A stretch of 64,000 nucleotides of DNA, taken from Macrostomum lignano. Lineage: Eukaryota. The DNA is taken from positions 248,001 to 312,000 of the forward strand of contig NIVC01000236.1 in the NCBI GenBank assembly GCA_002269645.1, given 5' to 3'. The position numbers were made by a program, and so were the translations under genes. Under the pieces are notes generated by a model that worked only from the letters and a program-made list of their open reading frames with translations, ran no database searches and was not told where the DNA came from. Of the stretch, positions 809-56,700 are shown piece after piece. Position 1 is the first letter of the stretch. Each line of letters opens with the position of its first letter.

Positions 809-3480
809 AGGAGGCAGGGAGGGAGGAAGACGGACAGGCAGATGGATTGCTCAAGTTCAGCTCAAGAACCATCAAGCGCCCCCACACAGCGCATTCCTCT
901 GCTTCAAAGAAGTCAATTCCAGAGCCAGGCAACTCTTCGGCAGCAAGCCGGTCCGTGGCCTCGTCCGCCTCCTGACCCAGTTCTCAGTTCCCCGATCAAG
1001 TCTATGAAGATTGCATTGCCGCAAGCGGGCTGAGACTGCGCAATGAAATTGCCGTGGCGCCACGTCGCAACCGCCGCCCCCAGCCCCCCAATTTACTCGC
1101 CCCTCCGGCCACGTCAGCGGCTCGCTTGGCTGGCCAATTGTTTTCTAAAATAGGAGAATCCAGTAAATAGGAAAATTCCCGCCTGCCCCATTAGAGCCAA
1201 TCACCGGCCTCGCATCCGAGCGCCCCGCGGCTCCCCCGGCGCAGGGCCCGGGGGCTACTTATTGGGGCGAGGCGGTCGTCCAGAAGCCTGCGCGCACCTG
1301 CCGACTCCGCCACCGACGCCAAGAGAGGAGGATCAGCTTCCACTACCGACTGTTCAAAGTGAGGAAAATTCTTCAGGATAACTTCTGAGCCTATTCAGAG
1401 AGTCTGTGAGTTTCGCCATCGCAACTTTCGCTTATTTACCACACTCTAGGTGGGGGGCTGGAAACTGTTTTGATCCTCTCAAGATTGCTGCTCAGTGCGG
1501 CGCATTCTCTCACCTTCTCACTTTGGACCCAGCAGAGGGTGGCTGCTGACAAAGTCCTTGTTGTTTCTGCTGCAACTTCTCGCTATCTGAGTCAGCAGTG
1601 GCGAGTCCTCAGCTCTCCTTTGTCTCACAGAGCTGAGCCGGCTGGGAGTTGGACTCGGGCAGTGCAGCTCAACAGCAGTGGGAGTACTTGAGTGCCGGCT
1701 GCTTCATGGGCATTGTTGAATGGCAGAGCAAGAAACCACTTGCAACAATTGCTGATAGCTCGCATTGGGCCTCGAAACCAAACTGCCTGGATGCGGGGAA
1801 GGAAGGAGACGCAGAGCTGCAGTCCCTGCCTGCCGATCTGCTGCTACTTCGCCACATTCTGACAGGCAGAACCAGCGCGTCAGACGCAAGCCCTCCTCAA
1901 GAGGAGCAAGTGGAGCTGCTCTCCACGTCAGAACCATGATTCCCCCCTTGTGCCCAGCTTTCGGATGTCTCGGCTGGCCCGTTTTTGCAGCAGCTGTCCA
2001 AAATTTTCCTATTTAGAAGATGAGAGAAGAGACTGAATGGAGCAGCGGCTTTGCCATCGATCAGCCCTCGGTTCGATTGCTTGCATTGTGCTCGCGCTGC
2101 TCGGCGAATGCTGAATGCCGCTTCCCACGCTGCCACGACCAGCGAGTCCCGGGCAGGTGGGCGGGGAGTGGGATAATTGCTTTCTTCCTCTGCCCGGCAA
2201 CGCGATTGGCAATGTAAAACTGGGGAACCGGACAGCGGAATTCGCTTCCACGAGCCCGGCTGCCCGCCGGATCTCCGAGGCCGACTGCGGCAGGGCAATA
2301 ATTTCTTGAGTCGGTCAACATGCCGGAGAAGGAGGTAATTACCACCTGTTTGCTCTGGCCACCCAGAGCCACTCGCACAGCACACAAAGTTTTTTCTTGT
2401 TCGCCATTTCTTGCCTGCTTCGATGAATATTCAATTGCGAGCGGAACATTTTCTGCTCCCGGCTGCTCCTTGATGCTCGAGTTTAGCGACAAAGTGGCCT
2501 CACTAATCTTTCAGTTCCTCAAGCAGCTCTTTCCCGAGTGGAAGGTGTGAGGGAAGTTTTTCCCCGACTTCTCCCCATCCGACTGGTTCGTAAATCACAG
2601 TCAAGTGGCGCCCGCCCCGATGAAGAGGGAGCCGGGCGGGGGCGGGCATGGGAGGAAAGCGGGACAAATGGCTGCTCAGATGATCAATGACTCGAAGGTG
2701 GCCGGGGCAGCCAGGCGGCAAAGCGAATGGGATCCGGGGCTCCAGTTTTCATGCTGCAGTTCGGTGTTGCTGGCTGCCTCCGCTACTTTCCGCCCCCTCC
2801 CCCTGTCTGTCCGCCCCTCCCCCTCCCCTATCTCGGCGATCGGTGAAGCACGAAAATCAAAGTGGCCAGCCAGTTCAGGAGGAAGCCCGTGTGAGAAGAC
2901 TGATGACGAAGAGGGGCTGGAGTTCCCCAGATCCCGAAGCGGGAAACTTAGCGCTGACAGTTTTTGCAGAAAACTCGAAGCTGACCGATTTCAAAGTTAA
3001 AAAAATCGATGTCACCAATCGGGTGACAAATGGAGGGGGGGCAGAGCCCCATCTCTCCCGCTCGGTTTTATGGCCCAAGCTGAAGAAGGTCAGAGGAAAC
3101 CTCCTGAGGTCTCTTGTGTGGCCGTGAGCTATTCCGCTGCTCTCAGCTACTTGGCAGTTTCTCCTGGAGAGTTGCACACACTCTGGGCATCGGTGCAGCC
3201 ATGGTTCGGGTGGTTAGGAAGAATCGCATTTTTATGTCAACTCCGTGGTTAAATAGCTGCATGAGAAGCTCATTGAGAAGCTGCTGCTCACCTTCACTGC
3301 CTCATCATCAATGATTCGGATCAGTGCGCTCTCTCTGAGCAACGATACCCCCACGGCTGGGCTTGCTTGTCACGCTACGGCAAATTTGACAAAGAAGTGC
3401 ATGTGGCATCGCGGAGAGGAGCCGCGAGCTTTTCTGCCTTCAACTTTGAAGTGCTTGAGGACCTGCTCGCCCATCGGGTC

Positions 3481-4145: not shown

Positions 4146-5118
4146 GAACGCAGCATGGAAGTTGAGCAATATCATCGGTGATTGAGTAACGCATCAAGGA
4201 ACCAAGAGCATAAAGTTTGCACTATTTTGGAAGCTCGTTGGAGCCCGGGCAGGGGGAAATAATTGTCCTAGCAAAATCTGCAATTCTTTTGCAGATCTTG
4301 CAAGTTTACGAGCCAATTGGTACATTTATAACTTTCCTCAACTCAATCGATTGCATGCGTTTTTGTTACTAATCGACAAATATTTTTCCATTTCTTTTTA
4401 TCTGCTTTTTCATGTGCCATTTGACACTGCTTTGGACAATTATTTCCTCATGGGAGGCTTCAGGACTGCCCAATCCGTGTTTCTGCCCAATCGAAGCGAC
4501 CCCTCCCTCAGAAAAGCGATCCACTGGAAGCGTGACCGTCCATCCCACTTAGCAGGTCGGAGGGAAAACAAGAAAGCAACACAAGATCACCTTGATTGCA
4601 AGCAAATTAGCAGATGAAGGGCAGAGGAGGCTGACCTGAAATTCAACCCTCAGCGGCGGGTAAATTGGCAGCTCCGCGGCTTCCGTGTCCGGTTTCCGAG
4701 CTCACCAGCTGAACGGAAGGTCCTGGGATGCCCAGCTGCAGGGATTCCACCTGAACTGTTTCTCCAGACCCACCGGTCATCTGTGTGTTTGTCCTCTCTG
4801 TGCAATAGAAAGGGAATCCCCCCCTCGGTTCTCCTTCTTTCCCGCCAGCCCCCCGGCCTGCAAGCAACTTTTTGAGTAGCAGGGGATCAAAGCGATGGGG
4901 AGACGAAGTGGAGACGGCGCTGGCGGTTGCCAACCAGACTGCTGGGGTGCCAGGCAGCCCCCATCAATCAAAGCCGAATGGGGCGGGGCGGGAGGCTGGG
5001 ACAGCTGGATTGATGTTGCAGATTAGTAACAACCTGACCCAGGCGCGCCGCTGCATTCCGCCTCCCCTTCAGGTGAAGCTCAAACAGAGGAATTGCGCCA
5101 AGCAAAGGGAAACGCAAG

Positions 5119-6727
5119 ATGAAGTCCGCAATCTGCTTGCCGAGTTTGCTGCTCCTGCTGCTGGCCGCCATCCTGGGGGCCTCCGACAGCGCGCGTGAGT
5201 CCGTCTGGTATTGTGTCTGTCACTGTGTCTGTCTGGTATTGTGTCTGTCACTGTGTCCGCCTGCTATTGTGTGCGTCACTGTGTCCGTCAGGTATTGTGT
5301 CCGTCACTGTGTCCGTCAGGTATTGTGTCCGTCACTGTGTCCGTCTGGTATTGTGTCCGTCACTGTGTCCGTCTGGTATTGTGTCCGTCATTGTGTCAAT
5401 CACTGTGTCCGTCAGGTATTGTGTCTGTCACTGTGTCTGTTACCGTGTCTGTCACTGTGTCCTGTGTCTGTCACTGTGTCTGTCACTGTGTCCAGCACTG
5501 TGTCCGTCTGGTATTGTGTCCGTCACTGTGTCTGTCACCGTGTCTGTCACTTGTCTGTCACCGTGTCTGTCACTTGTCTGTCACTGTGTCTATCACCGTG
5601 TCTGTCACTGTGTCTGTCACTGTGTCTGTCACTGTTTCTGTCACTGTGTCTCTCACTGTGTCCTGTGTCTGTCACTGTGTCTGTCACTGTGTCTGTCACT
5701 GTGTCCAGCACTGTGTCCGTCACTGTGTCCATCACTGTGTCCGTCTGGTATTGTGTCCGTCACTGTGTCCGTCTGGTATTGTGTCCTTCATTGTGTCAAT
5801 CACTGTGTCCGTTACTGTGTCCGTCTGGTATTGTGTCCGTTACTGTGTCCATCTGGTATTGTGTCCGTCACTGTGTCCGTCACTGTGTCCGTCTGGTATT
5901 GTGTCCGTCTGGTATTGTGTCCGTCACTGTGTCCGTCACTGTGTCCGTCTGGTATTGTGTCCGTCACTGTGTCCGTCACTGTGTCCGTCTGGTATTGTGT
6001 CCGTCCCCGTGTCTGTCACTGTGCCTGTTTGTTATTGTTTCTGACACTGTGTCTGTCTGGTATTGTCAGATCGAATCGTGCAAGTCTGATAAAAATCGGT
6101 TAAGCTGTTTTTTTAATATTTCACACATACCTAGATATATAGAGACAAACCTTATTTAGTATAGTAGAATCTATTTTCAAAGAAAAAAGAATTGATTTAC
6201 CAATGGAAGCCTAAAGCTACCTTTTTCGCCGTGTTTCAGCCGTCTCCAGCGACATCGCTCACGTCGACTCCCTTGCGGTGGGCGAGCGCGGAGCCCCCGA
6301 TGCGTCCGATGCTCATCTGCTCGAGGCTGAGGAGAAACGGGCACGCGGTTTTCTAGGAAAGCGAGCACGTGGTTTTCTAGGAAAGCGAGCACGCGGTTTT
6401 CTAGGAAAGCGAGCACGTGGTTTTCTAGGAAAGCGAGCACGCGGTTTTCTAGGAAAGCGAGCACGCGGTTTTCTAGGAAAGCGAGCTCGGGGATTTCTCG
6501 GAAAGCGAGCCCGTGGTTTTCTTGGAAAGCGAGCACGAGGCTTCCTAGGCAAGAGGGCGCGTGGTTTTCTTGGAAAACGTTCCAGAGGTTTTCTAGGAAA
6601 GCGCGCCCGCGGATTTCTAGGAAAGCGCAACGGCAATTACGACGACGAATATCTGATGGACGAAGACAGCCATTCCGATCATGACGAAGCTGCTTTCGAG
6701 GACTGGCGTGACGAAGGTGACGAATGA
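5119..6727 (+). CDS. Neuropeptide prohormone encoding 11x ARGFL-amide and 1x SRGFL-amide (2 coding exons, 187 aa)
   Basis: Exon 1 5119-5194 encodes a signal peptide (MKSAICLPSLLLLLLAAILGASDSA) and ends at donor GTGAGT (5195). Exon 2 6240-6727 follows TTTCAG in matching phase 1. Twelve 24-nt cassettes (6341-6628) encode xRGFL-G-KR, i.e. a Gly amide donor plus a dibasic convertase site. An acidic tail follows. Upstream UTR acceptor at 5071-5072; AATAAA at 6934-6939. Confidence 0.93.
5197..6068. repeat. Compound minisatellite (GTCCGTCTGGTATTGT / GTCACTGT) filling the prohormone intron
   Basis: Starts immediately after the donor; it accounts for the Cys/Val-rich ORFs at 5119-6159. Confidence 0.92.
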
Positions 6728-7210
6728 ATTGCCCTGAGCATGGACCATCAAGAACTGATCAGCGAGTTCCACGGGTGATGAAAACTAGAGAACCAGCCAG
6801 ACTGAACTGATGAGCCCTGATGCCCGCTCAGAGAAGACAGTTTTGCCTCCCAACCCGATTTTAATATCCCTCTTCTTCTGAGCTTAAAATCCATCCCAAA
6901 TGCTGTTCGCCAGTCACTGCGGATACCAAGCAAAATAAACGATGAGCAACTTTCTGTTGACGAGCCCCGATGTTCCCAGCTGGCTCGGGCTGCAAAAATC
7001 AAAAAAAAGATTTTGTCAGATTTTTCCGTTTGCCACATATTTGCTGTATAGCCTAGTTCAAGTAGCGCAGTGGGAAAACGTCTCCTAAAAATAATTTGCC
7101 ATTGCCAATATGTCAATGTTATTTTTTTATTCCGTTTTAAGCACTTCTTTAGGACTAAATGCCAGTAATTTCAGCGAAAACGAAGGCAGACGTCTTGCAG
7201 CGCTACATTC

Positions 7211-8273
<1,063 letters not shown>

Positions 8274-9062
8274 TCTTCTCGAAATTGATCAAATCGTTGA
8301 CTTATAGTAGTGCATTCCGATATAAGTAGAAACATTCGTTGAGTACAATAGTCCGCATTGTTACCAGGCTGTTACTAAATCAGAAGTTTCTGTCGTTATG
8401 TATAAATAAGCCTATTTGATCTTTCACCCTTCCCCCCTCTGCCACTTTACAGAAGACAAAACTTTTGCGTTTCATTTTCCAATCCGATGCCCCAGTCTTT
8501 CACACAGTGTAACACGGTGTGTTTTACTTGACAAATTCATTCGGAGACTTCCCACATTTGCACTGCTAAAACGATGATAAAACGGGAATAGAAATCCTGG
8601 CCTCAAACGCGCCCGACCTGCCCGACCGACCGAGGCTTTGAAGTTCAGCGGAGCGGCTCAAATCTGCTGACCGAAGCCGCCCACCTTCGCCGTGTCCGAA
8701 TTCCATAAGCCTTGTGGATTTGAAGCCAATCGAGCGAACCGAGTGGCGTCCCGGAGCCGCTCTCCGGATCGGCCCAGTTGCCACACAGTGAATGACCGCT
8801 GAGTCACCTGAGTCACGGAGACCCTGGGCTGCCATCTGGAGCGCCAACAGTGCAGAGATACGGAGAATTCACCTTAAAACGCGAACAAAAAACTTGATGC
8901 AGCCGAACGGATTCTGTAAAATATGGCGCAGAAACCGGCCACCTGTCCGTTCGAACCGGACATCTGCAGCGGGGTTCGGCTAACTCCGGCCAGCGAAGCA
9001 TCTCAGTCCGGTCATCGGGTCAATTGAAGGTTCACAATAGCAATCTTTCCCGATCGAGTCTT

Positions 9063-13620: not shown

Positions 13621-15905
<2,285 letters not shown>

Positions 15906-16545
15906 CAGGCTCCAGACAGGCTCTGGAAGCGAATCCCAGACTTGTAGGCGCACGAATTAATCCAGAAGAAATCCTCATCAGATTTGCGCCGAGCCAGTCA
16001 GCCGAGCATCCACCCGCTTTTGTCATTCCGGGCCAAGAGACGCCTGCAACTTATCGATCTGGTTATGACTGATCCTCCTCGCATCCCTGAGAAGATGGAG
16101 ACGGCTCGGGAAGAAATCCCCCAGTTTTTAACTCACTTGAAATTCCGTCGCATCTGGTAGAGGACCCGATTCGGACATATTTCTGCCCAGCTCCGGTTCG
16201 TCTCCCGCGCTGGAATTTGTCCCTTGGAGGCGCCCCGGCCCTAATAAAATTGATTGATCCGCTGCCCGATTGATTTTGCTGTCTCTGGGCCGCTCATTTG
16301 CATGTTGAGTGTCCGGTGGGGTCGGCGCCCATGGGACGGCTGTTTCTTTTTGAAACCGCCCCCCCCCCCTCAAAGAGTTCTGAGAGGCCGCTGCTTCGCT
16401 GCGAACTTTCATGGACTCGCGCCATTATGATAATTAGCATAATGGCCTCTGGGATGCCGTGCTCTGCTGGCTCGCAACCGAATTATTACTTCCTGCATCA
16501 GCAGCTTTAAAAGGGCATTTTGGGATGCAGCTGTGGGGGGAGGAG

Positions 16546-18902
<2,357 letters not shown>

Positions 18903-19603
18903 TGAGCTCGAATTCCGGTCATATAAAGCCAGCTGTGCTTGCAAGCTACAGTGCGTGATTCAGGTGTGACTGAGTAACTCAGGATCGGCTGAGCTCTTGA
19001 CGCCCGTCTCAGGAGGGGGCGGTTGCTGGGAATTCAGCAGGCATTTCCTGAATTGCGCGTGGCGGGTAGGGCGGCACAGCTATGCAGGCAGCCAGAGCCG
19101 CAGGATGGGTATGGCTAGTCTAACGCGGAGATGCAGCGCAGATGCTGGACGGGTGACGGGAAGCCGTGGGAGGCGGAGCAGCCCCATGCGAGCATTGTTT
19201 TAATTCTACAGCTGGGGAATCAATACAGTGCAGTGCGGCGGCGCCACCCTCCCGCTCCGCCTCAGCGGCTGCAGCGAGCTTCGAAAAACTGCTGCGGCTT
19301 CCCCGGGCCCGGCGCTTCTTTGCTCCCCATTTGAGGGCGGCTCAGCAGCCGCTGAGACAAAGCCTAAAGCGTTTTCCGTGTTGCGGAACCGCCGCGGGAT
19401 GATGCAGCTGCTGCTGATGCTGCCGCCGGAGGGCCGCTTGAAGAAAATCGAGGAGGCTGTCTTGTTTGCGCCGAGTATTTGTGAGACTCAAAGTTTTTCC
19501 TGACCGCTTGGTTCCTGAATCAGTAGATGCGATTGAGGATAATTTTGTTTGCAACTGCCTAAATGTTTGCGATAGTTGCTACTCTCAGTACTGTAATTGT
19601 TTA

Positions 19604-21925
<2,322 letters not shown>

Positions 21926-22640
21926 GAAATAAGCAGGCAGGCCAAGTGCATCTTCAGTGAATTTCACCGCCTGACCACTGAAGAGTGGTGGCTGGCACAA
22001 TGGCGGTCCAGCTGCACTGAGTGGAGGCTGGGAAACGCCAGCGGTGAGGAAGGAAGAAAAAGAGAGTCAAGCGGGCCCCCTCTCTCATTTCCTGCTGGGA
22101 AATTTCAGCAAACAATGAGCCCTCTGAGCCTCTAGTTGGACAGCGCATTGTGATGCCAGAGCACACAAGGCTGCTTGGATTATAAGATTTTCGGGGCCAG
22201 ATCCTTGGAGTCTGTCTTTGAGTCCCAACGAGGGGGAGGCGCGCGCCGGAGGCCGAGCAGCTGCAGGCCCGCAGTGTGACAGAAGAAATTGGTGAAGGCG
22301 GAAACTCCAAAGTATAAAATTAGAAGTTTTTCGGGCATCCCGCAAACCCAAGTAGATTTTATAATAAACAGCATCTGGGCAGCTGCTGGCCAATAGAAAG
22401 CAGGGGGCTCTGACAGCCCCAGCCGTATTTTACCCACTCTCTGGCCTACTCAGCCAGACTCCATCATTGCTGCTCACAGCTCCCGTCTGTCTGCTTTGGA
22501 CATCTTTCTGTTGGTTTCCTCCGGTTCGTAAAGGTGAAGAAGATTGTGCTTTGTTCATACTGCTGCTTCTGTAAGCAATTCGATAGTCTACTGATCTCCG
22601 CATGACGCTCGGCATGGTGAGCATGGTTTGATTTCCAAAT

Positions 22641-35400: not shown

Positions 35401-38400
35401 GTCTGCTGCGGCTGCTCCGAGTGGCCCGCCGAATCGACCAGTACAGCGAATACGGAGCGGCCGTGATGCTGCTGCTGATGGCCACCTTCACCCTGGTGGC
35501 GCACTGGTTCGCCTGCATCTTCTACGCCATCGCCTATGTAGAGCGGGACGGCCTACCCGCCAAGGTTTGATGAGGCAGTTGTTGGGAGATCTGGGGAAGC
35601 TGCGCCAAAATCAACTATGGGGGGATTAAACGTGAATCTACCGTGAATCTTAAATCATAAATCTTGGGCGGGAACAAGAAGATCAGGGGAAATGACAGTT
35701 AAGCTTGAGGATCAAGGGAAGTGACAGGCGAGTCAGAGGATCAGGGGAAGTGACAGGTGAGTCAGAAGATCAGGGGAAGTGACAGGTGAGTCAGGGGATC
35801 AGGGGAAGTGAAAGGTGATGCAGGGGATCAGGGGAAGTGGCAGGCGAGTCAGAGGATCAGGGGAAGTGACAGGCGAGTCAGAGGATCAGGGGAAGTGACA
35901 GGCGAGTCAGAGGATCAGGGGAAGTGAAAGGTGAGGCAGGGGATCAGGGGAAGTGACAGGCGAGTCAGAGGATCAGGGGAAGTGACCGGCGAGTCTGAGG
36001 GTTCCTAAAAGAGGGATTCCAATTTGAGAATTTCGAAGATCGACAGGTTAATGACTCATGCTCTTCCCACGTCGCAGGTTGGCTGGCTGGACCACCTGGC
36101 GAAGACATTCAACAAGCCGTTCCTGGAGAACTCGACCACCGGCATAGTGACCGGAGGGCCCGACATTCAGAGCAAGTACATCACCGCGCTGTACTTCACC
36201 TTCACCTGCCTCACCAGCATCGGGTTCGGCAACGTCAGCCCGAACACAAACGCCGAGAAGATCTTCACAATATTCGGCATGCTGATCGGCTCGCTGATGT
36301 CCGCCGCCATCTTCGGCAACGTCAGCAGCATCATGCTGCGGATCTATCAGGGCTCTGAAGAGTTCCACGAGAAGAAGACCAGCATTAAAGAGTTTATCAA
36401 GTTTCACAAGATACCCAAAAACCTGGCTCACAGGTTGCAGGAGAGTTTCCAGGTGAGCTGTGAGCTATTGGTTCTGTGAACCGGTGAGAGAGTGCGCACC
36501 GGTGAGAGAGAGTTCACACCGGTGAGAGAGTGCACACCGGTGAGAGAGTGCACACCGGTGAGAGAGTGCACACCGGTGAGAGAGTTCACACCGGTGAGAG
36601 AGTGCACACCGGTGAGAGAGTGCACACCGGTGAGAGAGTGCACATCGGTGAGAGAGTGCACACCGGTGAGAGAGTGCACACCGGTGAGAGAGTGCACACC
36701 GGTGAGAGAGTGCACACCGGTGAGAGAGTGCACACCGGTGAGAGAGTGCACATCTGTGAGATAGAGTGCACACCTGTGAGATAAAGTGCACACTGGTGAG
36801 AGAGTGCACACTGCTGAGACAGATAGAGAGTGCACACCGGTGAGAGAGTGCACACCGGTGAGAGAGTGCACACCGGTGAGAGAGTGCACAACGGTGAGAG
36901 AGTGCACACCAGTGAAAGTGCACACCGGTGAGAGAGTGCACATCTGTGAAATAGAGTGCACACCAGGGAGAGAGATAGAGAGTGCACACCGGTGAGAGAG
37001 TGCACACCAGTGAAAGTGCACACCGGTGAGAGAGTGCACACCGGCCCACCTGTTGCAGAACTCCTGGAACTACACTAACGGCCTGGACACAAACGTGGTG
37101 CTGAAGACATTCCCTGAGTGTCTGCAGGCCGACATCTGCCTGCACATGAACCGGAACCTGCTGAATAATTGCCCAGCGTTCAAAGGAGCCAGTCCGGGAT
37201 GCCTCAGGGCATTCAGCATGAAGTTCAGGACAACCCACGTGCCACCGGGTGAGTTTTACGAGCACGATTGGCTTGTGAAAGATGCAGTTAAAGTTCTTTG
37301 AGCACTTTTTATATCGCTCCTTGCACTATCGCGAATCAGCTTTCCCCGAAGTGAATTCCATTTCTCACAATTACAAATGTATGAGTAACCGATCTCGATT
37401 GAACCCAACTGCCCGCCAAGGCGACACCCTGGTCCACCCGGGCGACATCCTAGAGAACATCTACTTCGTGGTCCGCGGCTCAGTTGAAATCTCCCAGGAC
37501 GACACCGTGATGGCCATACTCGGCCGCGATGACATCTTCGGCGACGAGGCGATGCGCGCCGTCCGCGGCCACGTCGGCCAGTCGCTGTACACCTGCCGCG
37601 CTCTCAGCTACGTGGACCTCAACAAGATCAGCGTCGGCGACCTGAAAGAGATTCTCAACGTTTACAACGAGTGGGCGCCGATTTTCAAGCAGAATTTCAA
37701 AGTGACGTTCAACCTGACGGAGTCCGACCAGCAGGCGCTCAGCTGCTCCATGGACGACGAGACGCTGCGCTTCATCCGGCAGAAGAAGCCGCTGCTGCAG
37801 ACCAAGAAGGCTCGGAGCATCACCTCCTCAGGGCCGAGTGAGTGATGCAGTTTGCAGCTTATGAAGCTTTGACCTGATGCGGTTTGAAGTTTTGCAGATT
37901 TGTCGGTAAAAAAAAAGAATTGACCTTAAAATGTACCTACAGTCTTGGTTAAAAAGTACACGCTTTTTTAAAACAGTTGACGAGACTGTTTTAATCCCTA
38001 CAAAGAGCAAAAGTACACCATCTATACGAAGAGTGCTATCGCAAAAGTACACCATCTATACGAAGAGTGCTATCGCAAAATTACACCATCTATACGAAGA
38101 GTGCTTTCGCAAAAGTACACCATCCATACGAAGAGTGCTTTCGCAAAAGTACACCATCCATACGAAGAGTGCTTTCGCAAAAGTACACCATCCATACGAA
38201 GAGTGCTTTCGCAAAAGTACACCATCTATACGAAGAGTGCTATCGCAAAATTACACCATCTATACGAAGAGTGCTTTCGCAAAATTACACTATCCATACC
38301 AAGAGTGCTTTCGCAAAAGTACACCATCCATACCTTCGCAAGAATCGCAACCCTCCACTTGGCAGACACTCCCGGTATGACCCGGCAGGCCTCGGAAGTG

Positions 38401-41260
38401 AGCAACGCGCATCCCGGACATCCGCACATGCAGAAAAGCTACAGCGCTGTCGCGGTCACCCTTTCCAAGTGGAAGTCGGGCGGCAGCAGCGGAGGCGGCG
38501 GCGGTGGAACCAGGAGTCAGGAGACTCGGGCGCCTGGGGACAAGTCGGTTGAGAATATTACTCACCGAGTGGACACTCTGAACACGTGAGCAGGGGCGCA
38601 TAGGATGTGGACTGAACAGCGCTAAGTGGTGCGGATTTTTTGAGATTTCAGAGTTCCTTTTAACAACTCGCTAAATTTTCTTGCAAAGTGCACTTAGCCT
38701 ACTTACTTTTCGGCATATGTGTGCGCATGACTTTCTAAACTATTTTAGACTTTACAAATAAAGGCAGTTTAAGTGGCACAAGCCCAAAGCACAAAGCGAA
38801 AACAACTCGTAATTAGTGCAGTCAGGTGTGATGTACATTAGCGAGTGCCACTAAAATGTACATGGCTGAGGAGAGCAATAAAATGGGAGGCGGGTAGAGC
38901 CAGGCCGGGGTAGGACTGGAAATCGATAAATTTTAGCCAATAAAAAGTGAAGGAGGAAATTGAAATCTTACACAGCCTAGTCCCGAGGTCAATCTAGTCC
39001 ACGTTGATTATCAATTTTACTTGCAGCTCAAATCTAACCGCAAGGCTCCAAACAGACGCCCAATGGAAAGTAGCTTTAAAACCTCCAAAAGTCTGATGGA
39101 AGCACTGCTTACCATGCGCACACCCTAGTTTCAGTCTAGGCAGAAGTCAGATGGATTCAGATCAAATATAATCTATGGTAAAATACACACTCCGTTCCGG
39201 TCGGCTATGGTAAGCAGAACTTTTAGAACGATATCTTCCCTGATAGAAGGCTGCTGCATGCTTATTTTGCCTGCTGCATGCGTGCACCGGGAACCAAAAA
39301 CTGTCAAGAATTCAAGAATGCCATTGCTGCAGAAAGCAGGTCTCCAGACACAGTCCTGGTTCACCTGGACACGCAGGGCAGCAGTAGATTATTCGTTTGA
39401 TTCTTTCAGCTCGGTAGCAGACGCGACACCGCTTAGTTGGTCTTGGCTGACTTGGTGCAAGTCAAATGAGTATCTCGATCCAGAAGGTACTTGGCCAACC
39501 GATAAGAACCAAAGCATTTGTCGACAAAAATGCGGTAGCCTTGGTACAACAGATCTTGGCAAAGCTCGACAACAATTTTTTCGCTGAATGACAGATTTTC
39601 GCTTTGTGGATCTAAAACAAATCTACGATTCTCTTCCGGAGTAGCATGAACTCGAAAGTTGAACAAGTAGCCTGTTTCAGACTCACAAGCACAGTACAGC
39701 TTGATGCCGTACCTGGCGCGCTTAGTTGGAATGTACTGCTTGAAGCCTAGTCGTCCTTTGTTAGGAACTAACGACTCGTCAACACTCATTTCTTCGTCAG
39801 GTCTGTAGATTTTCACGCAGGTGTCACGCAAATTGTTCAAAAATGAAGGAATCTTGTATAACTGATCACCAGGTGTGGGATCCTCAAGGCAATCATAAAA
39901 GCGAAGAAAGCCGAGCAATTGCTTGAAGCGGTCTCTAGAGAGCGCCTCAGGTGCTTGAAAGTATGTTGTCAAGTGGTAGCTGTCAGTACTCCAGTAGTCA
40001 TTCATCTCAGTCTTCTTGTTGCTTCCCATGTACTTCTTGACTTCCTACATTCGGTCCACTGTGACAAACTCAAAGGTAGGTCATCAGCATCCAAGGAATG
40101 AATTGCTGCCCAAGCTCTACGGTTAGTCCACATAGCTAGGTTTTCAAACAACGAATCAGACAAGAATAAACCTAAGAAGAAGGAAGTTGAGTGCTCAACA
40201 CCGGCAGGCACTATTATTCCAGGATTCAGGCCAAGTGTTCCGAAAAACTCAATGCGTCGCTCCCAACGATAGCAGGCCGCCATGACAATTCATCAGCTTC
40301 GTCCTCATCAACACTGTCCAGAACATCCGACTCACCAGAAGAATCACCTGATAAGACGTAGTCCTCGTCGTCCGATGTCATGAGTTCAGACACTTCGTCC
40401 GCTTGGGCCATTTCAAGCTCTTTGAGAACTGGTTTTAGTATTCGACTCAAACCAGTCTGAGACGAATAAAGTATAGGAAACAAAAACTTGATAGAGTTCA
40501 AAAACCACAGTAATATAAAGTGCGACTGTATAAGCTGTTAAAGAAGCTAGACGAGTGAGGAGACAGATCAGCTTCTCTGTTTGAACTGACTGGGGCTAGG
40601 AAAAAGCACGTTTCTTATACTGTTCGTGTTGCCCATCCCTCTTGTACAGGGACCATAGTGTGCTTTCAGTCTAGAAACAGGCAACTTAAATGTACAGTTA
40701 TGCTTAATTTTCTACTCTGAATGCCGGCTGAATGTCTATTGATAAGCATTGCTTACCATGCCGACCAGAACAGAGAAAATATATCTATGGCTCAGTCAGA
40801 AGCCAAATAGTCTATGGTAAGCACTGCTTACCATCCGACTGGAACGGAGATGATTGAAATTTAGGCTAGTTTAGGCTAATAGGCTAATAATAGAAGAGTG
40901 GCCCGAGTGTTTCTACTGAAAGGAATTTGGTCAAAGATTGCTCAAATCAAGTGAACACTGTTCAGACCTGTTTTTATTTCGTGACCACCCCGCAGCCGCA
41001 TGGAGACCTTCGAGCGCCGGCTGTTCAGCACCGTGGACGGCATCTTGCAGCTGCTGGGCGAGCAGCCCCGGGTGCGGCTGAAGCGCGGCAGCATGAGCCG
41101 GCAGCAGAGCGCGCCAGCTTTGAAGCGCTCGCCGAAGCGCAGCGGCCCGCGGCTCCTCCGCACCGCCACGGAGGTCTTCGAGGCCATCGACTCGCACACT
41201 GCCAGGCTGAATGCCAAGGAGGGTGACAGCGACGGCCGCGCCGAGAAGAAAAAGTGCTGA
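26481..41260 (+). CDS. KCNH2-like: ERG-subfamily (KCNH2/6/7, seizure/unc-103-like) voltage-gated K+ channel, 11 exons, about 935 aa
   Basis: Phase-consistent GT-AG exons: 26481-26830, 28598-28654, 29461-29802, 30178-30319, 30882-31059, 35293-35564, 36078-36452, 37059-37248, 37421-37837, 38366-38585, 40996-41260 (2808 nt). Motifs: [13 protein letters not shown] (S1), [14 protein letters not shown] (S4), [10 protein letters not shown] (pore), C-linker/CNBHD ([18 protein letters not shown]) and a C-terminal coiled coil. The first three exons are less certain than the core. Confidence 0.93.
27286..28183. repeat. 27-bp minisatellite (GGCCGGGAGGCTAGTCAGGTAGTCTAT)n, KCNH intron 1
   Basis: Seen directly. 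Confidence 0.95.
28730..29460. repeat. 10-bp repeat (AGGGACAGAC)n, KCNH intron 2
   Basis: Seen directly; abuts the predicted acceptor. Confidence 0.95.
29826..30091. repeat. (GACT)n then (GAGT)n, KCNH intron 3
   Basis: Seen directly. Confidence 0.95.
30370..30862. repeat. 22-bp minisatellite (GATAGATCAGTCCCAGACAGCT)n, KCNH intron 4
   Basis: Seen directly. Confidence 0.95.
32270..32910. repeat. C-rich minisatellite (CCCCATCCCTCAGATCCCT-like), KCNH intron 5
   Basis: Seen directly. Confidence 0.9.
34695..35265. repeat. 36-bp minisatellite (GATGAGGCTCAAGTTGAGGATGAAGCAGGAGCTGGG)n, KCNH intron 5
   Basis: Seen directly; ends about 25 bp before the acceptor at 35291-35292. Confidence 0.93.
35680..36000. 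repeat. 29-bp minisatellite (GAGGATCAGGGGAAGTGACAGGCGAGTCA)n, KCNH intron 6
   Basis: Seen directly. Confidence 0.93.
36480..37044. repeat. 18-bp minisatellite (CACCGGTGAGAGAGTGCA)n, KCNH intron 7
   Basis: Seen directly. Confidence 0.95.
38008..38332. repeat. 34-bp minisatellite (AAAAGTACACCATCTATACGAAGAGTGCTTTCGC)n, KCNH intron 9
   Basis: Seen directly. Confidence 0.94.
39190..40849 (-). mobile_element. Defective piggyBac-family DNA transposon in KCNH intron 10
   Basis: Transposase remnants run from ATG 40411 to TGA 39312. They include an acidic N-terminus, YWS...SRDRF, SVDESLV...[23 protein letters not shown], and a C-terminal Cys-rich domain (KRCRVC...[17 protein letters not shown]). There are frameshifts and a large internal deletion. 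An imperfect inverted repeat lies at 39190-39217 and 40824-40849. No clean TTAA duplication was seen, so the ends are approximate. Confidence 0.85.
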
Positions 41261-53700: not shown

Positions 53701-56700
53701 ATGACGAGTATTAATGATCAACTATTGGGATGTACATAAATACGAGTAGTTATGGTACACATTTGTGCCATTTTTTTGAAAATTTGTGCCAAATGGGATT
53801 TTTAATTTTGACCGAAAGAAATCCTGGCTTTAGTTTTAAAAATCTATGCAGCTCACCTGTGACAAAGAGACTGGACAAGATGAAGAAGATTGTGAAGGCT
53901 ATCCAGAAGAAGCTGGTCCCGTACACGACGCCCACAACGCTGACAAAGATGACTATGGCCATGGCCATGTAGCCAACGTGGGCCGACGCGTTGATATCCG
54001 GGTGCCTGGTCTGGTAGATCTTCAGCATGCACAGCACCGCCAGCACGTACATGTAGGCCGTGTCGAACTGGAAGTTTGAGTAGCTCGGACAGACGTGGTA
54101 GCAGCCGGACATGATGCCCTCCATGATCAGCGCGATGCCCATGGCGTAGAAGATGCCAAAGTGCTGCGGTATGCCTCTGTTGTCCTCGCGGTCTCCTAGC
54201 AGAGCCCGCCGTCGCTTATTGATGAGATCGCGCCGCCTGGTGAGGCCGAGGAACAGCAGGCCCAGGGCCACGTAGCCGATGTTGGAGAAGATGTTGTTGA
54301 AAGCCGAGATCACGCCAAGCGGCCGGGCGCAATAGAAGTTGTAGTAGCAGATGTCCTGGTTGCCGCTGATGCGCAGGATCTGCTGGTAGGTGATGACCAG
54401 CTGCACTACTGGCAAGCCGTAGAATATGCTGATGATGATGAGGTACCAATAGTACAGCCGGTACTTGTTGCGCAGCAGAGCCGGCCGTTTCTGGCACAGG
54501 TCAGCCAGGTAGAGACGACGCGGCCGGCCCTCTTCGTCAGCGGCGGCCGCTGCGGCTGCTGCTTGCGCTGCCGCTGCTGCTGCTTTGTTGAACTCGGCCA
54601 TGATTGGCTGGCGGGCCTCCGCCTCTTCCCCAGGGCTGCTCAACTCCTCTTCGTCGAGGTCGGCGCTTTCACCGTGGCCGCCGCTGCCAAGCTGCTTTTT
54701 GCTGGTTGTCATAGGAACCGCCTGCATAGCGTATTTATGTCGCCATCGCTCATGACTGTGCGTTGGTGGTGACTGCGGCAGCGGCCGCCAAGTGCCGACG
54801 GTGGCGCTGTAATCGGCACACCCGTCGTCTTCGGCGTCATCGGCACCGCAGTTTAACCGGTCGCAGCTTTCGGAGTCTTCCGACAGCTCGCTTTGGTCAC
54901 CGCTTGATCGGGCCTCTAAACGCTGCTGTGCGTAGATGACGACTGCAGCGAGAATGTGGAAGCAGGCAAAGAAGGCAACCGCACCGAACACTGGCAGGTA
55001 GTACTGGCTGTTGTCCAGCGACACGCTTACTCGGAATTTGAATGCCTTGCTGGTCGGGCCGGCTGAGACAGCGCCCAGTGCCCCAGTAACTGCGGCGGCA
55101 GTTGTCTCAGTGGCCGCTGCTGATAGTGTTGTGGCTGTAGTTGCTATGGGCGGCTTGATCTTGTAGACATCTGCCATAACCCTCGGCTGCAAGTCGTTGA
55201 GCCGCGTGAAGCTGCAGTGCTCGCTGGACGGCTTGAGCACAAACACGATGTAGAAACTGTCACCGTTGATGCTGCTTCTCTCCACCGTGAGCTCCGCTCG
55301 AGTTGACATTGTCTGGTACTCGCCAGCGAACTCCACGTTACGCACCAGGTCGTAGACCGGGCAGTTAACCGACTGCGCGCTCATAATCATGCAGTCGGGC
55401 TTGTCGGACTCCGCCGATATGGAGAGTCGTCGGGCCCCGTCAGGGAATACCGCCTTGAAGTACTTCGGCCTTGACGGCGTGATGGTCTGGTGGTAAGTTC
55501 GATCAATATGCAGCTGAAACTCTCGTACAAGCGTCACGTTAAGCGTGAATTCCACTGGCCGCTCGCTCGCTGTTGATACGTCAATGTAGATGGTCTGGTT
55601 CTTGTCCACCGCGCCCTTGGACGCGTCCTCCACCGGGCAGAGCGTACGCGACACATCCGAGTAGCGTCGATCACCGTCCAGAATCTCCGGCACCTGGAAG
55701 GACAAGATCGACCGCTGCTGCCTGACAACAAACAGCACCGGATACTCCCGGCTGGCGCTGGGGCTGGCCACCTGCAGCCTCACCGCCTGCGTCAGGTTGG
55801 CCTTCTCCACGAAGCTGTACACGTACAGATAGTTCACCCAGTTGCTGGCGGCGCCGCGGTGGACGCTTTCGAACTGGCCGCCAATCTGACGCACTGTCGG
55901 CAGCAGCTGGCAGCTGGCGACTGTCAGCAGCAGCGGCCAGAGGCATCGGCAGGCCAGCATTGTCAAGTGGCTGATAGCCCGCGAGGCTCCTGTTCCGCGA
56001 AATTTCTGTAGTCTGAGCGACAGCGCTCAACTTCCTTTTCTAGGCTGCCTTCGCGTCTCCTCTGTTTCTCTCTCCGCTATAAAGGCCAGTCTATTGGCCA
56101 GGCACTCTGGTTCCCTCGCGCTGTCCTGGTTGAGTTGCACATTTATTTTTGTGCAAGTTTTGTCCCCGCATGGCGTTTTTGTTTGCCCAACTAAAAACTC
56201 TGGTGCACTCGTGCGGTCTCCACCCCTACTCCCTCTTTCAAGCTCAAACTCAAGCATTCTTCTGATCTGAGCTACAAAGTCGCTTACAAAGCAATGTTCG
56301 TATCGTATCGGAAATGTACGCAGGTCGGTAAATCTGTCAGTCTAGCTAGTGCCCAAAACTCAGAGTGCGTTAGTTGAGTTGCTCTGTTTATATCGTAGGT
56401 GCACTGGAGCGGAGAAATCGATTTCCTATTGCAGCTGTGCATTTTTTTGTTTGCTTTGATACGCCAACACAATGTTGTTAAGTACTGTACACTTCCATGC
56501 ACGTACTACAATAAAAAGAAAGTGTCTCTCCAAGCCTTTCCGACTCTGAAGGCGCTTACATTGATGTCACATGAAGCTTTTATGTACATTGTGTTTTTTG
56601 ACCAAATAAACGGTTGAAAAATATAAGACGTACAATAGCTGGATTTGATATCAACGTTAACGGACCTTGGCACAGTATTATTTACCCTGCTCATGAACTT

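What the first reader, a model, noticed from the sequence alone, without database searches (positions are those of the whole stretch)
5119..6727. Hidden two-exon prohormone releasing 12 copies of an [A/S]RGFL-amide neuropeptide
Seen in sequence: the ORF track splits this gene in two. Its signal peptide is buried at the start of a repeat-derived ORF (5119), and the cassettes lie in a GTG-started ORF (6278). A phase-1 GT-AG intron (5195-6239) joins them into a 187-aa precursor with 12 xRGFL-G-KR units. Units 1-6 are near-identical in DNA, while units 7-12 differ almost only at synonymous positions (e.g. GCA CGA GGC TTC CTA GGC AAG AGG). That indicates selection on the peptide, unlike the neighbouring satellites. 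Established: Gly plus Lys-Arg flanks are the PC1/2, carboxypeptidase E and PAM amidation signature. Inference: the product is ARGFL-NH2, which I cannot assign to a named bilaterian family. From memory the closest motif is the flatworm NPP-2-type RG-x-I-amides, which needs checking. It may be an undescribed peptide-receptor signalling system.
Basis: partly seen in the sequence, partly recalled or inferred. Interest (0 to 1): 0.78.

Follow-up and report, generated by a model that had tools for sequence, protein, structure and literature searches.

The report
Flatworm ARGFL-amide neuropeptide precursor gene
This is a real two-exon gene of the flatworm Macrostomum lignano that encodes twelve copies of a small amidated neuropeptide (ARGFL-amide), but it is already annotated in GenBank and belongs to a known peptide family (flatworm NPP-2 / spiralian FLamide), so it is not a new signalling system.

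Summary
ATG 5119, a GT-AG phase-1 intron 5195-6239 and stop 6725-6727 give a 187-aa precursor. It has a signal peptide, 11 ARGFLGKR plus 1 SRGFLGKR units placed back to back, and an acidic tail. Of 19 distinct base variants among the units, 16 lie at codon position 3, none at position 2, and only one changes the peptide. Neighbouring satellites show no such pattern.

The window is Macrostomum lignano contig NIVC01000236.1. GenBank already carries this gene over the same coordinates (BOX15_Mlig001753g3, PAA87360.1, 'hypothetical protein'). That annotation was built from RNA-seq and uses the same junction. Its product lacks 5 of the 12 units.

The peptide is not an orphan. It fits the flatworm NPP-2 motif RG[F/L/M][I/L/M]-amide: planarian RGLIa, cestode RGFIa, schistosome RGFMa. 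It also fits the spiralian FLamide motif A[K/R]xFL-amide, as in Platynereis AKYFLa, whose receptor is deorphanised. Unlike those precursors, it has no Cys-rich pro-domain.

Verdict: a real gene and a new member of a known kind. Interest is modest. Expression site, mature peptide and receptor remain untested.

The parts
5073..5118 (+). Putative 5' UTR of the ATG-bearing exon. It is preceded by a candidate acceptor CAG (AG at 5071-5072), which could serve cis-splicing or spliced-leader trans-splicing. It contains no other ATG and has an in-frame TGA at 5074-5076.
   Evidence: Sequence read. The older ML2-assembly model P0021 joins an upstream exon to exactly this point (...RLFK|VKLKQRN). Whether the site is used is inferred, not shown.
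5119..5194 (+). Coding exon 1: the signal peptide (MKSAICLPSLLLLLLAAILGASDSA) plus 1 nt, so the intron is phase 1.
   Evidence: Hydrophobicity profile. The same N-terminus is found in GenBank PAA87360.1 (P0001) and in A0A1I8ISS2 (P0043).
5195..6239 (+). Intron of 1,045 nt, GTGAGT...TTTCAG. It is mostly a 12/28/40-nt minisatellite (5240-6057) followed by an AT-rich tail.
   Evidence: The junction SDSA|PVSS is present in two independent gene models. A second AG 10 nt downstream (6248-6249) is used by the mis-framed model P0021 and would frameshift the ATG frame.
6240..6340 (+). N-terminal acidic pro-region (PVSSDIAHVDSLAVGERGAPDASDAHLLEAEE) ending in the first Lys-Arg (6335-6340). It contains no cysteine.
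   Evidence: 9 acidic against 1 basic residue. It scores -2.2 bits against the profile of the FLamide Cys-rich pro-domain.
6341..6628 (+). Twelve back-to-back 24-nt cassettes: 11 x ARGFL-G-KR and 1 x SRGFL-G-KR (unit 11). Units 1-6 are a young expansion that alternates CGC and CGT. Units 7-12 are older and differ at synonymous sites.
6629..6727 (+). C-terminal acidic peptide NGNYDDEYLMDEDSHSDHDEAAFEDWRDEGDE (32 aa, 15 Asp/Glu) and the TGA stop (6725-6727).
   Evidence: It is identical in P0001.
6934..6939 (+). AATAAA, the candidate polyadenylation signal, 207 nt after the stop and before the TCTG microsatellite (7211-8276).
   Evidence: Sequence read. Its use is inferred.
1187..1358 (+). Possible upstream non-coding exon (donor AAA|GTGAGG at 1359) that older ML2 gene models splice to 5073. 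This is weak and may be a model artefact.
   Evidence: tblastn of P0021 and P0043 onto the window and the sequence. GenBank lists no other gene within 10 kb of this gene upstream or downstream.

Best explanation
This is the Macrostomum lignano gene BOX15_Mlig001753g3. It encodes a classical multi-copy amidated neuropeptide precursor of the flatworm NPP-2 / spiralian FLamide type.

Proposed mechanism:
- The 187-aa prepropeptide enters the secretory pathway through its exon-1 signal peptide.
- Prohormone convertases cut at the 13 Lys-Arg sites.
- A carboxypeptidase removes the Lys-Arg.
- Peptidylglycine alpha-amidating monooxygenase converts the exposed Gly into a C-terminal amide.
- The products are 11 ARGFL-NH2, 1 SRGFL-NH2 and two acidic spacer peptides.
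- The pentapeptide is then released from neurons and acts on a G-protein-coupled receptor. By analogy this is a relative of the Platynereis FLamide receptor or a still unidentified second F[V/L/I]amide receptor.

Shown here: the gene structure, the cassettes, purifying selection on the peptide, a transcript-based annotation and the family resemblance. Inferred: the processing, neuronal expression, the receptor and the physiological role.
For: Structure and selection.

Identity of the locus: the window is 100% identical to NIVC01000236.1. GenBank gene PAA87360.1 spans the same 1,609 nt with the same junction. That annotation was built only from RNA-seq and transcript evidence, using StringTie/TACO, TBONE and TransDecoder (PMC5730564). 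A second copy from the ML2 assembly (P0043) has the same junction.

Family resemblance to NPP-2:
- Planarian Smed-npp-2 has a signal peptide followed by 7 back-to-back RGLIGKR units. It is expressed across the CNS (PMC2953531).
- A profile search finds NPP-2 in trematodes and cestodes with RGLL-, RGMI-, RGFM- and RGFI-amide.
- ARGFL therefore fits RG[F/L/M][I/L/M]-amide.

Family resemblance to FLamide:
- Named FLamide precursors are hits: Urechis (E 1.6e-19) and Platynereis F8UKT4 (E 1.6e-15).
- Their dominant peptides are AKYFL, ARPFL and ARYFL. These have the same length as ARGFL, the same Ala1, a basic residue at position 2, and Phe4-Leu5-amide.
- AKYFL-NH2 activates a Platynereis GPCR (PMC7053711; PMC8557429).

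Link between the two families: the NPP-2 pro-domain resembles the annelid FLamide pro-domain (hhalign probability 85%, E 5.8e-6; profile scores reached or exceeded by at most 1 of 2000 shuffles for 3 of 5 flatworm sequences).
Against: - Similarity to every relative rests on the short repeated motif, so E-values are inflated. The exhaustive search also pulled in FVamide precursors and junk low-complexity ORFs at E 1e-30 to 1e-44.
- The Macrostomum precursor lacks the Cys-rich pro-domain found in the planarian and trematode NPP-2 precursors retrieved (a reduced Cys pattern in Hymenolepis) and in about half of the FLamide precursors retrieved.
- It has an 8-residue unit with an extra Ala, whereas NPP-2 units have 7 residues.
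- It lacks the acidic spacers between copies that are typical of annelid precursors.
- No peptide, expression or receptor data were available. SignalP could not be run. There is no Pfam family for it.
- The GenBank product has only 7 units, so the expressed copy number is unsettled.
Confidence: 0.8

Rival explanations
1. The peptide belongs functionally to the EFLamide / EFLGamide (TRH-type) system rather than to FLamide/NPP-2, and signals through a TRH-receptor orthologue.
For: Precursors carrying the GSEFLGKR repeat, whose taxon was not determined and whose motif I recognise from memory as the arthropod EFLamide type, are among the hits (P0023, P0039, P0040, P0086). A nemertean precursor has AREFL-amide, which satisfies both motifs (P0010). 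Conzelmann 2013 groups FLa with FVa/EFLGa as 'fulicin related' (PMC3890597). EFLamide is a TRH orthologue (PMC7294237).
Against: ARGFL lacks the Glu at position -3 that names the EFL family. Position 3 of this peptide is Gly, as in flatworm NPP-2. Polyclad flatworms are reported to have a separate TRH-type peptide (PMC13551398). The Platynereis FLamide and EFLGamide receptors are different GPCRs (PMC8557429).
Confidence: 0.08
2. The mature product is the tripeptide GFL-NH2, or a mixture, because an extra cut occurs after the internal Arg (K-R-A-R|G).
For: Collins et al. left the same ambiguity open for the planarian homologue ('RGLIamide or GLIamide'). In KRAR the P4 Lys could favour monobasic cleavage. 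That rule is established knowledge of convertases and was not tested here.
Against: Ala1 and Arg2 are conserved in 11 of 12 units despite synonymous turnover, and Ala-basic is conserved in annelid FLamides. This argues that these residues are part of the active peptide. AKYFL-NH2, not YFL-NH2, is the ligand used for the Platynereis receptor.
Confidence: 0.1
3. The array is just another minisatellite of this repeat-rich region that happens to be open, and the gene model is an annotation artefact.
For: The window holds more than 40 tandem arrays, and the intron itself is a satellite. The GenBank model skips 120 nt without GT-AG sites, which shows that repeats confused the pipeline.
Against: Codon-position pattern of variation with P about 1e-7, absent from seven control arrays. 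The sequence has a signal peptide, consensus splice sites, a stop codon and AATAAA. The annotation is RNA-seq-derived. The motif is shared with neuropeptide precursors from several phyla.
Confidence: 0.02
4. It is a secreted repetitive peptide precursor with a non-neuronal role, for example a gland, reproductive or antimicrobial secretion, that converged on the FL-amide ending.
For: No expression data were seen here. Smed-npp-2 is also expressed in the penis papilla of sexual planarians. [quoted passage not shown]
Against: Four of five residues match family motifs from the same phylum and superphylum. The homologues are expressed in neurons.
Confidence: 0.05

Closest known systems
Flatworm NPP-2 precursors (Smed-npp-2, UniProt E3CTL0 / GenBank BK007035, and trematode and cestode relatives)
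   Same: Same phylum. Signal peptide followed by copies of R-G-[F/L/M]-[I/L/M]-Gly-Lys-Arg. These are back to back in the planarian. RGFI-amide (Hymenolepis), RGFM-amide (schistosomes) and RGLL-amide (Paragonimus) each differ from RGFL-amide by one residue.
   Different: Macrostomum units have 8 residues with an extra N-terminal Ala or Ser. There are 12 copies rather than 2-7. The Cys-rich pro-domain is absent. There is a long acidic C-terminal peptide. No Macrostomum sequence was recovered with NPP-2 queries, so the link is through the motif only.
Spiralian FLamide precursors (Platynereis dumerilii FLamide F8UKT4, AKYFL-amide; Urechis FLamide; ARPFL-amide and ARYFL-amide forms)
   Same: Amidated pentapeptide with Ala1, Lys/Arg2, a variable residue 3, and Phe4-Leu5-NH2, flanked by Lys-Arg on both sides. 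The family is a lophotrochozoan one to which flatworm FLa peptides have already been assigned (PMC3503879).
   Different: Annelid and mollusc copies are separated by acidic spacers. Many also carry an N-terminal C-x2-C...CC...C domain and a conserved RNNFL copy. None of these features is present here. Orthologues of the known receptor were found only in annelids and brachiopods (PMC8557429).
FVamide / PRQFVamide / fulicin-related precursors (ARMFV-amide, PRQFV-amide, SREFV-amide)
   Same: These are the highest-scoring non-Macrostomum hits in the exhaustive search, with the same x-R-x-F-[V/L]-Gly-Lys-Arg cassette logic. They are grouped with FLa as one lophotrochozoan family by Conzelmann 2013.
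   Different: They end in Val rather than Leu. The precursors are much longer, with many spacers. The similarity is purely at the level of the motif.
EFLamide (GSEFL-amide repeat precursors; EFLamide is an arthropod TRH-type peptide)
   Same: An -FL-amide C-terminus and a multi-copy Gly-Lys-Arg architecture.
   Different: The defining Glu is absent, and EFLamide is described from arthropods in the papers read. It signals through the TRH-receptor family (PMC7294237).

Membership tests
Amidated multi-copy neuropeptide precursor (generic) | N-terminal signal peptide | tested here: met
   K2, a 16-residue hydrophobic core and a G-A-S small-residue stretch, judged by inspection and hydropathy. SignalP itself was not available.
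Amidated multi-copy neuropeptide precursor (generic) | Repeated peptide copies bounded by dibasic sites, each with a C-terminal Gly as amide donor | tested here: met
   12 units of xRGFL-G-KR, with KR before unit 1.
Amidated multi-copy neuropeptide precursor (generic) | Purifying selection on the peptide relative to silent sites | tested here: met
   One of 19 distinct variants is non-synonymous, P about 1.5e-7. Control arrays are negative.
Amidated multi-copy neuropeptide precursor (generic) | Transcribed and spliced as modelled | tested here: met
   Indirect. The GenBank model PAA87360.1 has the same junction, and that annotation is RNA-seq-derived. Reads were not inspected here.
Amidated multi-copy neuropeptide precursor (generic) | Mature amidated peptide detected; expression in neurons or endocrine cells | not testable with these tools
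   No peptidomic or expression data were accessible.
Flatworm NPP-2 | Peptide core R-G-[F/L/M]-[I/L/M]-amide flanked by Lys-Arg | tested here: met
   RGFL compared with RGLI, RGLL, RGMI, RGFM and RGFI in planarian, trematode and cestode precursors.
Flatworm NPP-2 | Cys-rich pro-domain (C...C-x2-C...CC...C) between the signal peptide and the peptides | tested here: not met
   The pro-region has no Cys and scores -2.2 bits against the domain profile. The domain is present in the planarian and trematode NPP-2 sequences and reduced in Hymenolepis.
Flatworm NPP-2 | Recovered by sequence or profile search with NPP-2 queries | tested here: not met
   Searches with Smed-npp-2 and with a 5-sequence NPP-2 profile returned no Macrostomum protein. 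The word prefilter of that tool may explain this. The direct BLASTP pair gives E 5e-15, but over repeats only.
Spiralian FLamide | Pentapeptide A-[K/R]-x-F-L-amide as the dominant product | tested here: met
   ARGFL x11 here, against AKYFL, ARPFL and ARYFL in the named and unnamed FLamide precursors.
Spiralian FLamide | Significant similarity to named FLamide precursors | tested here: inconclusive
   E 1.6e-19 (Urechis) and 1.6e-15 (Platynereis). The alignments are driven by repeats, and junk repeats score as well or better.
Spiralian FLamide | Acidic spacers between copies, the RNNFL copy and the N-terminal Cys domain seen in annelid precursors | tested here: not met
   The copies are contiguous, there is no RNNFL unit and there is no Cys domain. 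These features are also missing from some accepted members, such as Pecten and Tubulanus, so they are not strictly defining.
Spiralian FLamide | Activates an orthologue of the Platynereis FLamide receptor (rhodopsin-gamma GPCR) | not testable with these tools
   The receptor sequence was not at hand. Its orthologues are reported only from annelids and brachiopods.
EFLamide / EFLGamide (TRH-type) | Glu-Phe-Leu(-Gly)-amide C-terminus | tested here: not met
   Position -3 is Gly in all 12 units.

The most novel reading that the evidence does not exclude
ARGFL-amide is the sequence intermediate showing that flatworm NPP-2 peptides (RGxx-amide) are the platyhelminth branch of the spiralian FLamide family. 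It shares Ala1, a basic residue 2 and Phe-Leu-amide with annelid AKYFL-amide. It shares Arg-Gly with flatworm RGLI- and RGFI-amide. Independently, the NPP-2 and FLamide pro-domains look homologous (hhalign probability 85%). The only known FLamide receptor has orthologues only in annelids and brachiopods. M. lignano supports transgenesis (and, from my memory of the field, RNAi). It would therefore be a good place to find the 'second F[V/L/I]amide receptor' that Thiel et al. 2021 ask about. That receptor could even be one of the orphan M. lignano channels related to FMRFamide-gated sodium channels, which did not respond to the FMRF-, YMRF-, FVRI- and W-amide peptides tested. I could not check whether Koziol 2016 or McVeigh 2009 already state the NPP-2/FLamide link.
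Probability: 0.45. Interest if true: 0.4.

Novelty: new member of a known kind. Interest (0 to 1): 0.3.

Why it matters
The practical value is modest.

1. It gives a name and a function to a GenBank 'hypothetical protein' of a regeneration model organism.
2. It flags that the deposited product (147 aa, 7 copies) under-counts what the assembled locus encodes (187 aa, 12 copies). This is a typical repeat-collapse problem in transcript-based annotation.
3. It supplies an early-branching flatworm member that bridges two peptide families usually listed separately: flatworm NPP-2 and spiralian FLamide. That sharpens the open question of which receptor F[V/L/I]amide peptides use outside annelids.

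It does not reveal a new kind of signalling system.

Tried and rejected
Papers not held in the library:
- McVeigh 2009 (PMC2749192), Koziol 2016, McVeigh 2012, Bauknecht & Jekely 2015, Conzelmann 2011 and Jekely 2013.
- I therefore could not check whether a 'Ml-npp' entry with ARGFL-amide already exists.
- I also could not read Fig. 1 of PMC3503879, which includes a Macrostomum peptide.

Literature searches:
- Full-text searches for RGFLamide, ARGFLamide, GFLamide, RGFL-NH2, RGLIamide and variants found nothing relevant.
- 'FLamide' together with 'Macrostomum' returns only PMC3503879.

Database look-ups:
No independent cDNA contig with 12 units was obtained.
- Pfam gives no family. A sub-threshold DUF1318 match is spurious.
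- P0035 carries RGPFL-amide plus a Cys domain and could be another intermediate form. It comes from an unnamed eukaryotic contig in an ENA metagenome, so its taxon is unknown.

Hypotheses tested and rejected:
- I asked whether a canonical GT-AG intron could explain the 120-nt gap in the GenBank product. Reading the unit sequence by hand, no GT/AG pair in the 24-nt unit removes a multiple of 24 nt while leaving the units intact. A collapsed transcript or a 7-unit allele is more likely (and reading of the units).
- A raw count of mismatches by position modulo 3 was a poor control, because single recurrent variants dominate some satellites. I replaced it with a count of distinct variants.
- Smed-npp-22 (AKYFRL-amide) was considered as the planarian FLamide counterpart. 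Its pro-domain does not match the FLamide domain profile (-0.3 bits) and it ends in RL-amide.
Full report
OBSERVATION

The region reads as the first-stage reader described.
- An ATG at 5119 opens a 76-nt exon encoding MKSAICLPSLLLLLLAAILGASDSA plus one base.
- The donor is GCGC|GTGAGT at 5195. The acceptor is a pyrimidine-rich tract ending TTTCAG at 6239.
- The second exon runs from 6240 to a TGA at 6725-6727.
- The spliced product is 187 aa. It consists of a signal peptide, a Cys-free acidic pro-region, twelve contiguous 8-residue cassettes (11 ARGFLGKR and 1 SRGFLGKR, at 6341-6628) and a 32-residue acidic tail.
- The mechanical ORF list does split the gene. One ORF reads from the ATG into the intron satellite, and the other is a GTG-started ORF over the cassettes.
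- AATAAA lies at 6934-6939.

IS IT MORE THAN A SATELLITE?

The window holds more than 40 tandem arrays, so the null hypothesis deserves a test.
- The twelve units carry 19 distinct base variants. Sixteen lie at codon position 3, three at position 1 and none at position 2.
- Only one variant changes the peptide (Ala to Ser in unit 11).
- Against the 31% synonymous fraction expected from random change of the consensus unit, P is about 1.5e-7.
- Seven other arrays in the same window with a period divisible by three show flat distributions.
- Units 1-6 alternate CGC and CGT, which points to a recent expansion of a 48-nt double unit. Units 7-12 are older and have diverged only silently.

WHAT AND WHERE IT IS

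A protein search identifies the organism as the flatworm Macrostomum lignano. The best hit is PAA87360.1 / BOX15_Mlig001753g3, a 'hypothetical protein' encoded on contig NIVC01000236.1 of assembly GCA_002269645.1.
- The fetched locus is base-for-base identical to the window over 16.7 kb.
- The annotated gene spans exactly 5119-6727.
- So the gene is not hidden. It is in GenBank with the same start, the same SDSA|PVSS junction and the same stop.

According to the genome paper, that annotation was produced solely from RNA-seq-guided transcript assembly with experimentally defined boundaries, followed by TransDecoder (PMC5730564). The junction therefore has indirect transcript support.

A second copy from the older ML2 assembly (A0A1I8ISS2) is embedded in a fused gene model. 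It has the same junction but a different number of units and an Asn-to-Asp change. This is consistent with the partly duplicated genome of the sequenced line.

One discrepancy is worth recording. The GenBank product has 147 aa. It equals the genomic product minus exactly five ARGFLGKR units. No GT-AG pair in the 24-nt unit can remove 120 nt and leave the units intact (my own reading of the unit sequence). The shorter product therefore most likely reflects a collapsed de novo transcript or a 7-unit allele mapped onto a 12-unit locus.

Two older models also splice an upstream exon (about 1187-1358, donor GT at 1359) to an acceptor at 5071-5072, which lies 46 nt before the ATG. That site may be a cis-splice acceptor or a spliced-leader acceptor. 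I could not decide which.

FAMILY

The peptide is not an orphan, for two reasons.

- The supplement of Collins et al. 2010 lists Smed-npp-2 as a signal peptide, a Cys-rich pro-domain and seven back-to-back RGLIGKR units. The predicted product is 'RGLIamide or GLIamide'. It is expressed across the planarian CNS and in the penis papilla.
- Searches with that sequence and with a five-sequence profile recover NPP-2 in many trematodes and in Hymenolepis. The peptides are RGLL-, RGLI-, RGMI-, RGFM- and RGFI-amide.
- The family motif is therefore R-G-[F/L/M]-[I/L/M]-amide, and RGFL fits it.

Second, the search with the Macrostomum protein returns the named FLamide precursors of Urechis and Platynereis, and dozens of unnamed relatives.
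- Their dominant products are AKYFL-, ARPFL- and ARYFL-amide. These are pentapeptides with Ala1, a basic residue at position 2 and Phe-Leu-amide, as in ARGFL-amide.
- FLa and FVa are treated as one 'fulicin-related' lophotrochozoan family (PMC3890597).
[quoted passage not shown] Their alignment figure includes Macrostomum. I could not see the figure, so this very peptide may already be catalogued.

ARGFL-amide sits between the two motifs. In addition, the Cys-rich pro-domain of NPP-2 resembles that of annelid FLamide precursors.
- Profile scores are 13-18 bits for three of five flatworm sequences, reached or exceeded by at most 1 of 2000 composition-preserving shuffles.
- hhalign gives probability 85% and E 5.8e-6 over 32 columns.
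- Caveat: I located the flatworm domains with a cysteine pattern derived from the annelid ones, so the shuffle test is partly circular.

LIMITS OF THE ASSIGNMENT

- All similarity involving the Macrostomum protein lies in the repeated motif.
- The exhaustive HMMER search scored FVamide precursors (ARMFV, PRQFV, SREFV) and meaningless low-complexity ORFs at 1e-30 to 1e-44. E-values therefore cannot be taken at face value.
- The Macrostomum pro-region has no cysteine and no match to the domain profile.
- Its unit has an extra Ala relative to NPP-2.
- Its copies lack the acidic spacers of annelid precursors.
- NPP-2 queries did not retrieve it.
- Thiel et al. [quoted passage not shown]

I therefore file it as a new, macrostomorphan member of a known kind. 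It works like NPP-2 and FLamide. Strict orthology remains to be shown.

MECHANISM

Inferred from established prohormone biochemistry:
- signal-peptide removal near residues 20-22;
- convertase cleavage at the 13 Lys-Arg sites;
- carboxypeptidase trimming;
- amidation of the Gly;
- products: 11 ARGFL-NH2 and 1 SRGFL-NH2, plus acidic pro-peptides.

A minor alternative is further cleavage after the internal Arg to give GFL-NH2. The conservation of Ala-Arg argues against this.

The receptor is unknown.
- The only deorphanised relative is the Platynereis FLamide receptor, a rhodopsin-gamma GPCR activated by AKYFL-NH2.
- Its orthologues were found only in annelids and brachiopods.
- This led Thiel et al. 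to ask whether a second F[V/L/I]amide receptor exists.
- In Platynereis, FLamide is expressed in a ciliomotor neuron.
- A role in ciliary or muscular control of this worm (which, from my own knowledge, moves by ciliary gliding) is a reasonable guess, but it is only a guess.

RIVALS

- A TRH-type EFLamide affinity is suggested by precursors with GSEFL-amide repeats and by the nemertean AREFL-amide among the hits. It is contradicted by the absence of the defining Glu.
- A non-neuronal secretory role cannot be excluded without expression data.
- The 'mere satellite' reading is effectively refuted.

VERDICT

This is a new member of a known kind, and possibly already catalogued in papers I could not read. 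Interest is about 0.3. The value lies in naming a hypothetical protein, correcting its copy number, and providing a bridge between NPP-2 and FLamide.

Noticed in passing
window 6341-6628, compared with GenBank PAA87360.1: The deposited protein for this locus has 7 peptide units, while the assembled DNA encodes 12. The difference is exactly five units (120 nt), and no canonical intron could remove them. This is probably a repeat-collapse artefact of transcript-based annotation, or a shorter allele.
   Followed up: partly
window 53750-55966 (- strand): A single uninterrupted 738-aa ORF matches the SID-1 dsRNA-gated channel family (PF13965, E 7e-124). This may be relevant to systemic RNAi in this model flatworm.
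   Followed up: partly
window 39433-40029 (-) and 58071-59045 (-): Transposase remnants. One is a piggyBac-type DDE_Tnp_1_7 fragment (E 4e-42). The other is a mariner/Tc1-like ORF (Transposase_1 plus HTH_32).
   Followed up: no
window 37282-37845 (+): A 187-aa ORF with a cyclic-nucleotide-binding domain (PF00027, E 1e-10). It is probably one exon of a larger gene flanked by minisatellites.
   Followed up: no
whole window, e.g. 1-841 (GGCA), 7211-8276 (TCTG), 13737-15906 (12-mer x181), 16546-18904 (CTGT), 19603-21927 (ATAG): Tandem repeats are extremely dense, with more than 40 micro- and minisatellite arrays in 64 kb. Several generate long spurious ORFs on both strands. This matches the published 15% simple and tandem repeat content of this genome.
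   Followed up: partly
window 985-1358 and 8648-8788: The older ML2-assembly gene models A0A1I8ISS2 ('Transmembrane protein') and A0A1I8IRI5 ('RRP7 domain-containing protein') fuse low-complexity upstream and downstream pieces to the neuropeptide exons. The second uses the AG at 6248-6249 and the wrong frame of exon 1. Both UniProt names look like artefacts.
   Followed up: partly
related proteins P0179, P0181-P0198 compared with the annelid FLamide precursors among P0002-P0042 (no window coordinates): The Cys-rich pro-domain of flatworm NPP-2 precursors aligns with that of annelid FLamide precursors (hhalign probability 85%, E 5.8e-6). This suggests the two families are homologous beyond the peptide motif. 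In Hymenolepis the domain is reduced, and in Macrostomum it is absent.
   Followed up: partly
L002 2001-2657 (ENA metagenome contig ERZ21939214:ctg11863l): A single-exon precursor (P0035) from an unidentified eukaryote combines the Cys-rich pro-domain with five RGPFL-Gly-Lys-Arg copies. It is another possible intermediate between RGxx-amide and xxxFL-amide. The taxon is unknown.
   Followed up: no
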